A stretch of 64,000 nt of DNA from Haliotis rufescens (lineage: Eukaryota), in contig NW_025964334.1 of NCBI RefSeq assembly GCF_023055435.1, positions 14,756,001-14,820,000 of the forward strand. The letters are read 5' to 3'. The number at the start of each line of letters is the position of its first letter. The first letter of the stretch is position 1. Below, one piece after another: positions 26,903 to 32,347 of this stretch. The position numbers and the translations under genes are program-made. The notes under the pieces were generated by a model that saw only the letters and a program-made list of their open reading frames with translations, was not told where the DNA came from and ran no database searches.

Positions 26903-27181
26903 TGTTGTGTGAGACGATCTCTACTTCCGTCGGAGACATTCGGTTTCCCTCGGAAGTGTTCGGGCAGCCGAGGCCGAGGTGCACGTGGCCGAGCGCTGCC
27001 GGAAAAGGGATCGTCTGCAACGAAGCTTCGAGAAAGGTAAAATCCCTAGTTCTGAGCTAACAGTCGCGGACCGCAGTTTAGAATAACACTACGCAGATCG
27101 TGCCGGACGATCACACTATTAATTGGCGAAACCATCAGGGCAGTTAATCACCATATTGTTCGCGGAAGTAAAATCACTACA
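26903..27181 (+). repeat. 5' LTR
   Basis: tgttgtgtgagacg...aaatcactaca; 7-bp imperfect terminal inverted repeat tgttgtg/cactaca; matches 32069-32347. Confidence 0.97.
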
Positions 27182-27182
27182 G

Positions 27183-27195
27183 TGGCGCTGCGAAC
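27183..27195 (+). promoter_or_regulatory. Primer-binding site (tRNA-Ser-like)
   Basis: TGGCGCTGCGAAC one base after the LTR end; TGG is complementary to tRNA CCA; the sequence resembles the complement of metazoan tRNA-Ser 3' ends (tRNA identity tentative). Confidence 0.7.
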
Positions 27196-27823
27196 AAAAA
27201 TACGATTTCTGCTTTTGAACGGGCCGCCATTTTGATTGTTTTGACCGTTGCCGATCTGAAGTGAAAATTTTGTCGTACGATTGGAAGATATTTTCCATGT
27301 ACGGCAAATATTGTAATTATTGATGCTATATGTTATTATATGTATGTCTCAAACATTTTTCATTCATGTGCCACGCGAATTAACGTGTTTGGCAGATTTT
27401 GAGAAATTTTGACAGTCTGTTGCGAGCGTCAACAAAACCTCTGACCTCGTGACCTTTACCCTCGTCCGTGATACTTTGCATACGAGCGATTGTTTGTATG
27501 TATATGTATTTTCTGAACGAAATTTTTGTGTGAGATTGATTTATTACCACTTTTGGTCCACCGTGATACCTATTCATCGTGGATTAATCGTATAATAAAA
27601 TTGAAATCTGTTGAATATTCTGTGGTGACAAGACAACACAGGAATCGTCAATATTGTCGAGTTTGGGATCACACACTCGCTGAGTTTTGCGATAATTTTT
27701 GCAAAATACAATATTGCTCAACAATTTGAAGTTTGGATCCCACACCTGCTGTGTGTTGCGATAGATTTTGATAAAAACATCTTGTTCATAAAGTGAATTA
27801 GGACTTCAAAATTAAATCAAACC

Positions 27824-29867: not shown

Positions 29868-31415
29868 CACTGGAGTGAAGGCCAGCTGGAAACTGCAATC
29901 AGGGCGCCACAGCTAGGTCTCTCAAATTCCTTTAAAGGTGCCCACGAGGAAGTCACTGCTCACGGCAATGGTCCTAGCAGACCACAAACTGCTGTGAGTA
30001 GTGACATCTTCAAAGGTCTATGCCCTGAAGTTACCATCAATGCAGTGCATCATGGAACAGTTTTTACCATCCCGCTATTGGTCCAGGGCACAAAGGCAAT
30101 AATTGATACTGCAGCAGAGGTGAAGCTATTCAAGAAGCTTCAACATAAACCAGTGAAGAACCATGATGTCACCTTACGCACTGCTGGACGAGAATTGAAG
30201 ATGCAGGGTTTTCTCACCAAACCAGTCACATTGCAGGTCCAAGACAAGCATTTCCAAATGCCTGTATATGTGGCTCCAATAGGAGATGATATAATCCTGG
30301 GCTTTGACTTCTTGCTGAAAAATAGTGCCGAAATTGACATGAAAAATCATATCCTAACCATAAATGGAACAACAGTGGACATGGTTTTAAGGGAGTCAGG
30401 TAAACCAGTTAATGTATGTCGCATCATGATACCCCGGCGTACGTTACTACCACCCCATTCAGTAACCAGGACACTCTGTTATATGGAGCAGGTTTTGGAC
30501 GTCCTCGTCTTGGATGAGGGCGCCTCAGAGTTTGATGGTCAGTCCCTTGCGGGTCCCATCTCACCTCAAGCCATTGACTCTCATTGTCATCTGGATCGTC
30601 TCCAACTTAGACAGTTTGGCAAGTACCTAGAAAGTAGGTCTTTGGAGGACACCCTAAAGCCAGGACCCCAGCAACATCCAGATCGACCATTTCAGTTGGT
30701 TAGTGTGGTGTCCGTACATTGTGACCCGGGCACATATCCAAAGGTCACAGGCCAGGACACAAGGATCCACCACGCTATTGGTCTGCATCCTAAGAAGGCA
30801 GACCAATTTAACCAGGCTATCAAGGAGAAGATCTGCCACCTCCTGAAACAGCCTCAAGTCGTCGCCCTAGGGGAGATCGGTATCGACCAGTCCACCCCTC
30901 CAGCCTCCTGGGTGCGACAGAGGGAGGTGTTCCAAAGCCTGCTTAAACTCAAGCCATCAGGCCTACCGGTGATAGTCCATTGCCGTGGCAACGCAATGGA
31001 CGAAAAGAAGAATTTTGGTGCTGTGGCCCATTGCCTTGCTATAGGCATCCTAGATAGGCACTGCCAGGAATCCAAAGCAGATAGTGTATCAGTCATGGCC
31101 ATTCATGTCCATTGCTTTGGGGGAGATTACCAGGTTCTAGAGGCCTGGTTGGTCAAATTCCCCAGGGCCTACTTTGGATTTTCTGGAATGGTGGCGAGAT
31201 TCACATCTCAACAAAAGAGAGCTGTAAGGAGGGTACCAGAAGATAGGCTACTCCTAGAGACAGATGCACCCTACCTGTCTCCGAGAAATAACAGGATCAG
31301 CACCCCCAATGATATAGGCGAGGTGGCCTACTTGGTATCAAGGATCCGTGGGACAACAGTGGAATCGGTTCTCGCCACCACCACAGCCAACAGCCAAGCC
31401 CTGTACCACTTCTAG
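29823..31415 (+). CDS. Pol-position ORF: retropepsin-like aspartic protease fused to a TatD family DNase (TATDN2-like)
   Basis: Frame is open from 29775 and overlaps the gag end. Protease motifs IIDTAAEV (~30105) and ILGFDFL (~30300). TatD from ~30570: DSHCHLD, HCDP, AIGLHP, ALGEIGID, PVIVHCR, IHVHCF, YFGFSG, LLLETDAPYL; TAG stop at 31413-31415. Confidence 0.9.
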   Translation, partial: VKLQRGGSKGLSPTPHWSEGQLETAIRAPQLGLSNSFKGAHEEVTAHGNGPSRPQTAVSSDIFKGLCPEVTINAVHHGTVFTIPLLVQGTKAIIDTAAEVKLFKKLQHKPVKNHDVTLRTAGRELKMQGFLTKPVTLQVQDKHFQMPVYVAPIGDDIILGFDFLLKNSAEIDMKNHILTINGTTVDMVLRESGKPVNVCRIMIPRRTLLPPHSVTRTLCYMEQVLDVLVLDEGASEFDGQSLAGPISPQAIDSHCHLDRLQLRQFGKYLESRSLEDTLKPGPQQHPDRPFQLVSVVSVHCDPGTYPKVTGQDTRIHHAIGLHPKKADQFNQAIKEKICHLLKQPQVVALGEIGIDQSTPPASWVRQREVFQSLLKLKPSGLPVIVHCRGNAMDEKKNFGAVAHCLAIGILDRHCQESKADSVSVMAIHVHCFGGDYQVLEAWLVKFPRAYFGFSGMVARFTSQQKRAVRRVPEDRLLLETDAPYLSPRNNRISTPNDIGEVAYLVSRIRGTTVESVLATTTANSQALYHF

Positions 31416-31492
31416 TAAGTGACTAGAAGGACACCCGGGTTACTCCTGGGGGTCAGGAAAGTGGTACAGCCACGATAAACACAACTCACCCC

Positions 31493-32068
31493 ATCAAGTA
31501 CCCGTGTCCATTCATGGGTATTTTGCATCTTAATTATCCGATGCTAATTGTGGGGTACAAACCCTCAACACCTCGCCTGATTGAATGTGTGGAGTAGGGC
31601 TGCAAGGATTTAAAAACTACGTACAAGGAAATACAAGACACAGTGAATCAAGTACCCGTGTCTATTCATGGGTATTTTGCATCTTAAATTATCTGATGCC
31701 ATAGGCTGTGGGGATACCATTAAACCTACAGACCCTTAACACCTCGCATGATTGAATGTGTGGAGTAAGGTTGCAAGAATATAGAAACTCCATATTGACA
31801 CAGTAAATCAAGTACCCGTGTCCATTCATGGGTACAAACCCTTAACGCCTCGCATGATTGAATGTGTGGAGTAGGGTTTCCAGCAATATTAAAGCATCCC
31901 TCCCAGCGATGACGGACGTCTTCGGATGTGCCAGAGCGGCTAAAAAGTAAGGTGTTCCTCCAGCAATGACGGACGTCTCCGGATGTGCCTGAGCAGAAAA
32001 GATGGGGGAGGACCTTCAGCAATGACGGACGTCCTCGGATGTACCCGAGGTTAGAAAACAGGGAGGAG
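31493..32068 (+). repeat. Element 3' UTR tandem repeats: three longer units and three ~57-bp units
   Basis: atcaagtacccgtgtc.attcatgggta at 31493, 31647 and 31807; cagc.atgacggacgtc....gatgt at 31904, 31961 and 32017. Confidence 0.85.
32053..32068 (+). promoter_or_regulatory. Polypurine tract
   Basis: agaaaacagggaggag directly abuts the 3' LTR. Confidence 0.8.
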
Positions 32069-32347
32069 TGTTGTGTGAGACGATCTCTACTTCCGTCGGA
32101 GACATTCGGTTTCCCTCGGAATTGTTCGGGCAGCCGAGGCCGAGGTGCACGTGGCCGAGCGCTGCCGGAAAAGGGATCGTCTGCAACGAAGCTTCGAGAA
32201 AGGTAAAATCCCTAGTTCTGAGCTAACAGTCGCGGACCGCAGTTTAGAATAACACTACGCAGATCGTGCCGGACGATCACACTATTAATTGGCGAAACCA
32301 TCAGGGCAGTTAATCACCATATTGTTCGCGGAAGTAAAATCACTACA
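32069..32347 (+). repeat. 3' LTR
   Basis: Identical to the 5' LTR except ggaaGtgttc vs ggaaTtgttc. Confidence 0.97.

What the first reader, a model, noticed from the sequence alone, without database searches (positions are those of the whole stretch)
26903..32347. Young LTR retroelement whose pol frame is protease + TatD nuclease, with no RT, RNase H or integrase
Seen: 279-bp LTRs differing at one base, 4-bp TSD, PBS, PPT, a CCHC Gag, and a pol-position frame in which a retropepsin (DTA, ILGFDFL) runs without a stop into a complete TatD domain. The expected TatD motifs are present (HxH, GxHP, GExGxD, HCR, HCF, ETD). No YxDD RT or DDE integrase motif is recognisable between the LTRs, and there is no room for one. 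Established: Gypsy pol is PR-RT-RH-IN; TatD proteins are TIM-barrel metal-dependent 3'-5' exonucleases / AP endonucleases; the CDP, HxHCF and ETDAPY details resemble the metazoan TATDN2 subfamily. Inference: a non-autonomous family mobilised in trans that packages a captured nuclease into its particles. The nuclease could process RNA:DNA hybrids or cDNA ends, remove stray cDNA, or attack competing elements or viruses. The alternative is an in-frame internal deletion of a larger autonomous TatD-carrying element. I cannot check whether TatD-bearing Gypsy families are already catalogued.
Basis: partly seen in the sequence, partly recalled or inferred. Interest (0 to 1): 0.95.

Follow-up and report, generated by a model that had tools for sequence, protein, structure and literature searches.

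The report
Deleted copy of TatD-carrying Gypsy retrotransposon
This abalone element is a broken-down, internally deleted copy of a 10-kb Gypsy-type retrotransposon, and its parent family, with several sister families, carries a selected TatD (TATDN2-like) nuclease as a third gene, an accessory gene I could not find described for LTR retrotransposons.

Summary
In detail: 279-bp LTRs with one mismatch, a TATC duplication, PBS, PPT, a CCHC Gag, and one open 546-codon frame running from a retropepsin into a complete TatD domain, with no RT, RNase H or integrase.

Longer copies in the same genome (Haliotis rufescens) encode Gag, then PR-RT-RH-IN-PHD, then a separate ORF3 of about 655 codons ending in TatD. 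The window copy lost 4,775 bp between two copies of TATGGAGCA, which fused PR in frame to the last 310 codons of ORF3.

Only two loci share this junction. Each has its own 4-bp duplication, so the deleted form was mobilised in trans at least once. Both copies have a broken gag, and both lack seven codons around the protease active-site loop.

The interesting part lies one level up:
- TatD evolves under purifying selection (dN/dS 0.30), like gag and pol.
- About 18 diverged IN-PHD loci in this genome have a TatD frame 0.7-2.4 kb downstream on the same strand; at two more it abuts the integrase.
- The element's TatD belongs to a large clade marked by an unassigned helical domain, separate from conventional host TATDN2.

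No paper in the searchable library links TatD to a eukaryotic transposable element. Read-level checks and context in other species were unavailable.

The parts
24587..26896 (.). 43/81-bp tandem satellite on the 5' side of the insertion
   Evidence: TRF finds period 43, 55 copies. The repeat families are the same.
26899..26902 (+). Target-site duplication TATC, 5' copy
   Evidence: Empty-site versions occur in neighbouring satellite units.
26903..27181 (+). 5' LTR, 279 bp, TG...CA ends
   Evidence: It is 278/279 identical to the 3' LTR.
27183..27195 (+). Primer-binding-site-like TGGCGCTGCGAAC, one base after the LTR
   Evidence: Read from the sequence. It is conserved in C35 and C201 and deleted in C578.
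27824..29023 (+). ORF1 N-terminal part: helix-hairpin-helix motif, a low-complexity repeat region, and the start of the capsid
   Evidence: HHH_3 E 1.9e-5, below Pfam's cut-off. dN/dS is 0.89 against C578.
29012..29014 (+). Private 1-bp deletion that shifts the gag frame in this copy only
   Evidence: C35, C201 and C578 all have an extra T here.
29005..29856 (+). Gag capsid-nucleocapsid frame, with the CCHC knuckle at about 29707-29760
   Evidence: Retrotrans_gag E 7.4e-6 and zf-CCHC E 1.1e-5. dN/dS is 0.23.
29775..29859 (+). Gag/pol overlap; the pol frame is -1 relative to gag
   Evidence: Frame map and sequence.
30066..30362 (+). Retropepsin domain (DTA active site) lacking 2 + 5 codons around the active-site loop
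   Evidence: Weak Pfam hits, E 0.012-0.028, against E 7.6e-11 in the long copy. The 6-bp and 15-bp deletions are shared with C35.
30482..30490 (+). Deletion junction: the single retained copy of the 9-bp microhomology TATGGAGCA
   Evidence: Both parental flanks are seen in C201, C1, C578 and C90. The two blocks lie 4.6-4.8 kb apart in long copies.
30483..31415 (+). Last 310 codons of the parental ORF3. The TatD domain runs from about 30573 to 31412, with the stop at 31413-31415
   Evidence: TatD_DNase E 1.1e-42; 1YIX alignment; fold TM 0.79; dN/dS 0.30.
31474..31900 (+). 3' untranslated region with internal direct repeats (68 nt x3, 60 nt x2)
   Evidence: Repeat families D5 and D7.
32053..32068 (+). 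Polypurine tract AGAAAACAGGGAGGAG abutting the 3' LTR
   Evidence: Read from the sequence.
32069..32347 (+). 3' LTR
32348..32351 (+). Target-site duplication TATC, 3' copy
32345..33229 (.). 81-bp tandem satellite continuing on the 3' side
   Evidence: TRF finds period 81, 10.9 copies.

Best explanation
The window element (5,445 bp) is a non-autonomous internal-deletion derivative of a Ty3/Gypsy-type LTR retrotransposon family of the red abalone. Full-length members are about 10.25 kb.

Shown:
- Parent elements carry three genes. ORF1 is an HhH-like N-terminus plus Gag capsid plus a CCHC knuckle. Pol, in the -1 frame, is PR-RT-RNase H-IN with a C-terminal PHD finger, and it ends at a conserved TGA. 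ORF3 is a separate gene of about 655 codons, with an Arg/Ser-rich N-terminus, a conserved helical domain of unknown fold ('X'), a disordered linker and a complete TatD barrel.
- The window copy lost 4,775 bp between two copies of TATGGAGCA. That removed RT, RH, IN, PHD, the intergenic spacer and roughly the first 345 codons of ORF3. It joined the protease frame in phase to the last 310 codons of ORF3.
- The deleted form was copied at least once more. The C35 locus has the same junction, a different duplication and different flanks.

Inferred:
- The deletion arose by template switching of reverse transcriptase, or by another microhomology-mediated event.
- The deleted RNA was packaged and reverse-transcribed by proteins from autonomous relatives.
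- The PR-TatD fusion is a by-product of the deletion, not a design.

Function of TatD in the family (inference from selection and homology):
- It is a working accessory nuclease of the element.
- The most likely role (about 40%) is action on the RNA strand of RNA:DNA hybrids, or 3'-end trimming of replication intermediates. Human TATDN2 removes the RNA strand of R-loops.
- Alternatives are nuclear or chromatin steps of integration, or counter-defence.
For: Deletion:
- Own-genome search splits the query at 3580-3588 in C201, C578, C1 and C90, with 4.6-4.8 kb between the blocks.
- Both parental flanks share TATGGAGCA.
- Long copies encode gag-asp_protease, RVT_1, RT_RNaseH, Integrase_H2C2, rve and PHD, then TatD.
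- Pol stops after '...FCDYCLYN' in all four long copies. ORF3's first conserved ATG lies about 85-140 nt downstream, and its phase relative to pol varies between copies.

Mobilisation:
- Only 2 of 16 junction-region matches span the junction, the window and C35.
- The duplications are TATC and GTAT, with unrelated flanks.
- Long copies have their own 4-bp duplications. C90 has identical LTRs, so the family was active very recently.

Decay of the deleted lineage:
- The window has a private gag frameshift and C35 has a gag stop.
- Both lack 2 + 5 codons around the protease loop.

TatD as a selected element gene:
- dN/dS is 0.30 (p 4e-4), against 0.23-0.39 for gag, PR, RT and IN in the same pair of copies.
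- The catalytic residues are invariant or nearly so in 28 relatives.
- The fold matches TatD structures, TM up to 0.79.
- About 18 loci have an IN-PHD match at 49-75% identity with a TatD frame 0.7-2.4 kb downstream on the same strand; at two more C46 loci the two abut. Many of those frames are open for 550-770 codons.
- The host TATDN2 is a separate multi-exon gene on C68.
- In the tree, all 125 X-domain rows and the element form one clade (support 93), apart from conventional TATDN2.
- TATDN2 degrades the RNA strand of R-loops (PMC12754012, citing Jaiswal 2023).
Against: - I found no long copy with all frames open among the four examined, so the autonomous source is inferred, not seen.
Its reality rests on two assembled loci.
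- The large deletion and the two small protease deletions all keep the reading frame, and the 546-codon frame is open in both copies. That leaves some room for selection on the fusion.
- TE linkage of X+TatD proteins in other species was not shown.
- The biochemical role of TatD is untested.
- The tree is FastTree with local supports only.
Confidence: 0.88

Rival explanations
1. An adapted non-autonomous family. The PR-TatD fusion is maintained by selection because delivering the nuclease as part of a Gag-Pol-like polyprotein into particles helps its own mobilisation or harms competitors.
For: - The 546-codon frame is open in both copies.
- The large deletion and the two small protease deletions are all in frame.
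- The TatD motifs are intact.
- The form was mobilised at least once.
Against: - There are only two copies in 1.33 Gb.
- Each has a different disabling lesion in gag.
- The protease lacks the strand after its active-site loop.
- The junction is a plain microhomology deletion.
- In the parents TatD is a separate gene that carries the X domain, which the fusion has lost.
- Window and C35 differ at only two sites in TatD, so selection on the fusion cannot be measured.
- An in-frame result has a one-in-three chance for a single deletion.
Confidence: 0.07
2. A recent transduction. This element lineage picked up the abalone's own TATDN2 mRNA, as acutely transforming retroviruses pick up host genes.
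For: - The nearest named relatives are called TATDN2.
- The coding sequence has no introns.
Against: - The host TATDN2 is a distinct multi-exon gene on C68. It is only about 45% identical to the element's TatD over one conserved exon.
- The element's TatD falls in the X-domain clade, away from gastropod host TATDN2 proteins.
- About 18 diverged sister loci, with IN at 49-75% and TatD at 28-39% identity, keep the same gene order.
Confidence: 0.03
3. An assembly artefact. The PR-TatD junction is a collapse or chimera in the assembly.
For: No read-level check was possible.
Against: - The same junction occurs at two loci on different contigs. Each is bounded by LTRs and its own duplication.
- The junction sits on a microhomology, as expected of a biological deletion.
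- An intact empty-site sequence occurs in the adjacent satellite units.
Confidence: 0.01

Closest known systems
Bdelloid rotifer Juno and Vesta LTR retrotransposons, whose ORF3 encodes a DEDDy 3'-5' exonuclease or a GDSL esterase (Rodriguez et al. 2017, PMC5408684)
   Same: A Gypsy-like element with a non-envelope, enzymatic third ORF downstream of pol. The ORF is a nuclease with intact catalytic residues, and the ORF type is shared by several diverged families.
   Different: - The nuclease here belongs to a different superfamily: a TatD TIM-barrel metallohydrolase, not DnaQ-like DEDDy.
- The host is a mollusc.
- ORF3 also has an Arg/Ser-rich N-terminus and an unassigned helical domain.
- Purifying selection is detectable here, whereas that paper reported no significant departure from neutrality.
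Internally deleted non-autonomous derivatives of LTR retrotransposons and retroviruses, mobilised in trans
   Same: The copy keeps the LTRs, PBS, PPT and leader. It lacks RT and IN, has a microhomology breakpoint, and was reinserted with a new duplication.
   Different: The deletion happens to fuse the protease in frame to an accessory nuclease domain. The lineage has only two members.
Metazoan TATDN2, an R-loop-resolving nuclease that acts on the RNA strand of RNA:DNA hybrids
   Same: A TatD barrel with all metal-binding motifs, a long disordered N-terminal region, and TATDN2 proteins as the nearest named relatives.
   Different: It is not the orthologue. The host gene is a separate intron-bearing locus. 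The element's TatD lies in a separate clade marked by the X domain. It is intronless, multi-copy and lies inside LTR elements.
Chromoviruses and other retrotransposons with chromatin-reader domains on the integrase (chromodomain, PHD, MBD; PMC6673714)
   Same: The parental integrase ends in a PHD finger, a plausible targeting module. PHD fingers in retrotransposons are documented.
   Different: The reader domain is PHD, not a chromodomain. The window copy has lost it.

Membership tests
Ty3/Gypsy (Metaviridae) LTR retrotransposon | Paired LTRs with TG...CA ends, a short target-site duplication, a PBS and a PPT | tested here: met
   Long copies also have 4-bp duplications.
Ty3/Gypsy (Metaviridae) LTR retrotransposon | Pol domain order PR-RT-RNase H-IN | tested here: met
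   Met in the long family members C201 and C90. It is not met in the window copy itself, which keeps only PR.
Ty3/Gypsy (Metaviridae) LTR retrotransposon | Placement of the RT within a named Gypsy lineage | not tested
Non-autonomous internal-deletion derivative | Collinear with an autonomous relative on both sides of one breakpoint, lacking RT and IN | tested here: met
Non-autonomous internal-deletion derivative | Mobilised after the deletion: at least two insertions share the breakpoint but have different target sites | tested here: met
TatD-family metal-dependent nuclease | A full-length TatD domain with the HxH, GxHP, GExGxD, HxR, HCF and ETD motifs | tested here: met
   Pfam profile positions 1-253 of 253, the alignment to 1YIX, and invariant columns.
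TatD-family metal-dependent nuclease | TIM-barrel fold matching solved TatD proteins | tested here: met
   The AF2 model has pLDDT above 90 over the barrel. Foldseek gives TM 0.67-0.79 to YcfH, TatD, TATDN1 and TATDN3. The model is of the C90 ORF3, which is 98% identical to the window's over TatD.
TatD-family metal-dependent nuclease | Nuclease activity and substrate preference | not testable with these tools
   This needs a biochemical assay.
TATDN2 orthologue (host gene) | Groups with conventional TATDN2 of related animals and occupies the host locus | tested here: not met
   The host gene is multi-exon on C68. The element's TatD lies in the X-domain clade, outside the group that holds the Aplysia, Lymnaea and Elysia TATDN2 proteins.
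LTR retrotransposons with an enzymatic non-env ORF3 (Juno/Vesta type) | A separate ORF between pol and the 3' LTR that encodes an enzyme | tested here: met
   Met in the long copies. In the window copy only the C-terminal 310 codons survive, fused to PR.
LTR retrotransposons with an enzymatic non-env ORF3 (Juno/Vesta type) | Homology of the ORF3 enzyme to DEDDy or GDSL | tested here: not met
   The ORF3 enzyme is TatD. So this works like that group but is not a member of those families.

The most novel reading that the evidence does not exclude
An undescribed and probably ancient clade of Ty3/Gypsy retrotransposons in molluscs, perhaps wider in Lophotrochozoa, carries a selected third gene. 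That gene encodes a TATDN2-related nuclease preceded by a novel helical domain. It may serve as an accessory RNA:DNA-hybrid or end-processing nuclease in retrotransposition or in evading host control. If so, many invertebrate gene models now named 'TATDN2-like' or 'YcfH-like' are transposon genes.
Probability: 0.5. Interest if true: 0.7.

Novelty: new variant of a known kind. Interest (0 to 1): 0.55.

Why it matters
- It corrects the reading. There is no LTR element whose pol is 'protease plus nuclease'. The fusion is an accident of a deletion.
- Accessory genes of LTR retroelements are few: env, dUTPase, chromodomain, and DEDDy or GDSL in rotifers. A TatD/TATDN2-type nuclease kept under the same constraint as gag and pol, across several diverged families, would be a new entry on that list.
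- TATDN2 acts on RNA:DNA hybrids, which are the central intermediate of reverse transcription. This suggests a testable role.
- It bears on annotation. RefSeq names these abalone ORFs 'TATDN2' or 'YcfH-like', and more than 100 database clusters share the X+TatD architecture.

Tried and rejected
Synteny of IN-PHD and TatD therefore rests on reported coordinates only.
- Metagenome scan with the ORF3 alignment: it returned only bacterial TatD/YcfH genes at 24-34% identity, so it said nothing about TE linkage.
- Long TatD relatives (900-1,543 aa) scanned for RT or IN: none found.
- Fold of the X domain: no convincing match. Foldseek E was 2 or more, the best VIA Z was 3.8, and the protein atlas gave no usable hit.
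- Spliced subgenomic RNA for ORF3: there is an acceptor-like motif upstream of the ORF3 ATG, but no strong donor motif in the leader. This stays speculation.
- X-domain presence as a tree label: it is noisy, because many database proteins are N-terminally truncated. I used the clade walk instead.
- Literature: seven searches found no paper linking TatD to a eukaryotic transposable element. Repbase and Dfam could not be searched.
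Full report
**What is in the window.** A 279-bp direct repeat bounds 26903-32347. 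The two copies differ at one base (LTR position 54) and start with TG and end with CA. TATC is duplicated on both sides. The element sits inside a 43/81-bp satellite. Neighbouring satellite units carry the uninterrupted target GGACATATCTGTAACC, with 8 exact copies against none expected by chance, so this is a genuine insertion.

A PBS-like TGGCGCTGCGAAC follows the 5' LTR after one base. A purine tract abuts the 3' LTR. Three frames carry the coding capacity:
- 27824-29023: a weak helix-hairpin-helix hit, low-complexity repeats, and the start of a capsid.
- 29005-29856: Retrotrans_gag and a CCHC knuckle.
- 29775-31415: 546 open codons, with weak retropepsin hits and a full-length TatD_DNase hit (E 1.1e-42).

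All six TatD motifs are present and align with E. coli YcfH over residues 4-255. No RT or integrase lies between the LTRs.

**The PR-TatD junction is a deletion breakpoint.** I searched the window's own genome (1.33 Gb, 615 contigs) with the element. Copies on C201, C578, C1 and C90 match query positions 1-3588 and 3580-5445 as two blocks 4.6-4.8 kb apart. In those copies, TATGGAGCA occurs once just after the protease and again about 30 codons before the TatD domain. The window keeps a single copy of it, at 30482-30490, flanked by the left context of the first and the right context of the second. In the C201 copy the missing segment is 4,775 bp.

The missing segment encodes RVT_1, RT_RNaseH, Integrase_H2C2, rve and a PHD finger.

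**Architecture of the parent family.** The long copies are about 10.25 kb (C201: 1056996-1067250). Each has its own 4-bp duplication: GTAA, TTGC and GTAC, plus an imperfect one in C90.
- Pol ends at the same TGA, after '...FCDYCLYN', right after the PHD finger in all four copies.
- The next conserved ATG ('MENHRSRS...') lies about 85-140 nt downstream. Its phase relative to pol varies with small indels.
- TatD is therefore the C-terminal domain of a separate ORF3 of about 655 codons, in the position where some retroelements carry env.

ORF3 has an Arg/Ser-rich N-terminus, a zinc-finger-like CxxxxC...HxxxxH motif, a conserved helical domain that I call X, a disordered linker, and the TatD barrel. 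The TatD part of the model matches solved TatD, YcfH, TATDN1 and TATDN3 structures with TM up to 0.79. The X domain folds confidently (pLDDT 90) but has no convincing structural or Pfam match.

**Status of the deleted form.** Only two loci carry the junction: the window and C35:12038298-12038497. Seven loci keep each of the undeleted sides. C35 has unrelated flanks and its own duplication (GTAT), and its LTRs differ at two bases. So the deleted RNA was reverse-transcribed and integrated at least once after the deletion, necessarily with proteins supplied in trans.

The lineage looks like it is decaying, not adapted:
- The window has a private 1-bp deletion near 29013 that breaks gag.
- C35 has a stop codon in gag.
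- Both lack 2 + 5 codons around the protease active-site loop. Long copies read AEAIIDTAAEVTIISDKLF, and these two read AIIDTAAEV-KLF.

The family produces other derivatives as well. C90 has lost gag and PR, fusing the ORF1 N-terminus to RT, and it has identical LTRs, so activity was very recent. None of the four long copies I read has all frames open.

**TatD is a selected gene of the element.** I compared the young subfamily with the older C578 copy (dS about 0.10). The dN/dS values are:
- TatD: 0.30 (excess of synonymous changes, p 4e-4).
- Capsid-nucleocapsid: 0.23.
- PR: 0.24.
- RT-RH-IN: 0.33-0.39.
- X domain: 0.28.
- ORF1 N-terminus: 0.89, close to neutral.

The catalytic residues are invariant or nearly so across 28 relatives.

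**TatD carriage is a clade-level feature.** The genome holds at least 20 further intronless X+TatD frames at 28-39% identity. Many are open for 550-770 codons. I then searched with the family's IN-PHD segment. About 18 non-family loci matched at 49-75% identity with a TatD frame 0.7-2.4 kb downstream on the same strand. Examples are C46:5282016-5283224 with 5279805-5281220, and C17:122270-123475 with 124330-125667, where the open frames are 1,408 and 738 codons. At two further C46 loci the TatD frame directly abuts the integrase. Integrase families at 44% identity or less have no TatD frame nearby, and none of them aligns through the PHD.

**Relation to host TATDN2.** Cluster members and matching contig lengths identify the genome as Haliotis rufescens. 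RefSeq calls the C90 ORF3 'putative deoxyribonuclease TATDN2'. H. cracherodii has two 480-aa copies at 96-97% identity.

The conventional host TATDN2 is a separate multi-exon gene at C68:1042865-1047335. The X domain occurs in 124 of 269 retrieved relatives. Named examples come from Ruditapes, Pinctada, Elysia, Mercenaria and Lingula.

In a TatD-domain tree rooted on bacterial sequences, all 125 X-domain rows, including the element, lie in one clade of 174-177 sequences (local support 93). The 77 sequences just outside have no X domain. They include conventional TATDN2 of Aplysia, Lymnaea, Elysia and Candidula, plus spiders, ticks, starfish and a cnidarian. This argues against a recent capture from the abalone gene and for an old, TE-associated lineage. 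Linkage to retroelements outside Haliotis is inferred, not shown. The only hint is a Pecten 'TATDN2' gene model that fuses an RT fragment to TatD.

**Mechanism.**
- Shown: the deletion, its microhomology, trans-mobilisation, and purifying selection on TatD.
- Inferred: the deletion arose by template switching during reverse transcription.
- Inferred: in the window copy, any TatD protein could come only from a Gag-PR-TatD frameshift product or an internal start. It would lack the X domain, and gag is broken, so the copy is probably inert.
- Inferred, for the family: I favour (about 40%) a role on RNA:DNA hybrids or the 3' ends of replication intermediates. Human TATDN2 degrades the RNA strand of R-loops. 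Integration-linked and counter-defence roles remain open.

**Novelty.** Seven full-text searches found no report of TatD in a eukaryotic transposable element. The closest precedent is the DEDDy exonuclease or GDSL esterase ORF3 of bdelloid Juno and Vesta elements. PHD fingers on retrotransposons are known. The finding is a new variant of a known kind. The specific claim of a 'PR + TatD pol' is explained away.

**Limits.** Repbase and Dfam could not be searched. Read data, context in other species, and the sequences of the paralogous loci were unavailable.

Noticed in passing
L035:2074-3437 (C35 copy, at the position matching window ~27432-27439): A 1,365-bp insertion with about 15-bp terminal inverted repeats (GGCGAAACCGCATTA...) and an 8-bp duplication (ACAAAACC). 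It looks like a small hAT-type DNA transposon nested in the sister copy.
   Followed up: partly
L034 (C90:28479332-28486563, minus strand): A second kind of deletion derivative of the same family, 7,232 bp with identical LTRs. Gag and PR are lost, and the ORF1 helix-hairpin-helix N-terminus is fused in frame to RT. ORF3 is nearly intact, with one stop.
   Followed up: partly
window 27824-28010: ORF1 starts with a helix-hairpin-helix motif (HHH_3 E 1.9e-5, just under Pfam's cut-off), which is unusual for a Gag N-terminus. The ORF1 N-terminal region as a whole evolves almost neutrally (dN/dS 0.89).
   Followed up: partly
L034:4562-5788 (minus strand) and the sister families: The family's integrase ends in a PHD finger (E 1.5e-9). 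The IN-PHD arrangement is shared by the TatD-bearing sister families but not by the lower-identity integrase families.
   Followed up: partly
window 24587-26896 and 32345-33229: A 43/81-bp tandem satellite whose minus strand gives long repetitive open frames (MPSSSWCSPPRLQICP...). These are probably a by-product of the repeat, not a gene.
   Followed up: no
G000:C46:3916204-3918101 and C46:4045033-4046930: Two loci about 130 kb apart with identical scores, in which a sister-family integrase directly abuts its TatD frame (a 9-bp gap). This is either another internal-deletion derivative or a segmental duplication.
   Followed up: no
protein P0127 (NCBI MES9883066.1): A 642-aa X+TatD protein is deposited as 'MAG: TatD family hydrolase [Sedimenticola sp.]' on a 6-kb contig. 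The X domain is otherwise seen in animals, so this is probably animal DNA binned into a bacterial genome.
   Followed up: no
protein P0066 (Pecten maximus 'TATDN2', 268 aa): The gene model joins an RT fragment (RVT_1, residues 8-82) to a partial TatD (residues 76-253). This hints that TatD is linked to retroelements in scallops too.
   Followed up: partly
window 30483-31415: The protein database holds a 310-aa NCBI/UniRef model (P0261) that starts exactly at the ATG inside the deletion junction. The truncated ORF3 remnant of this transposon copy is therefore annotated as a host protein.
   Followed up: partly
literature: PMC6962438 (giant squid genome): A 'TATDN2' gene is listed among transposon-like non-Hox genes (POGK, ZMYM1) inside the Architeuthis Hox cluster. 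It may be another transposon-borne TatD.
   Followed up: no
window 31474-31900: The 3' untranslated region between TatD and the PPT contains internal direct repeats (68 nt x3 at 75-85% identity, 60 nt x2 at 83%).
   Followed up: no
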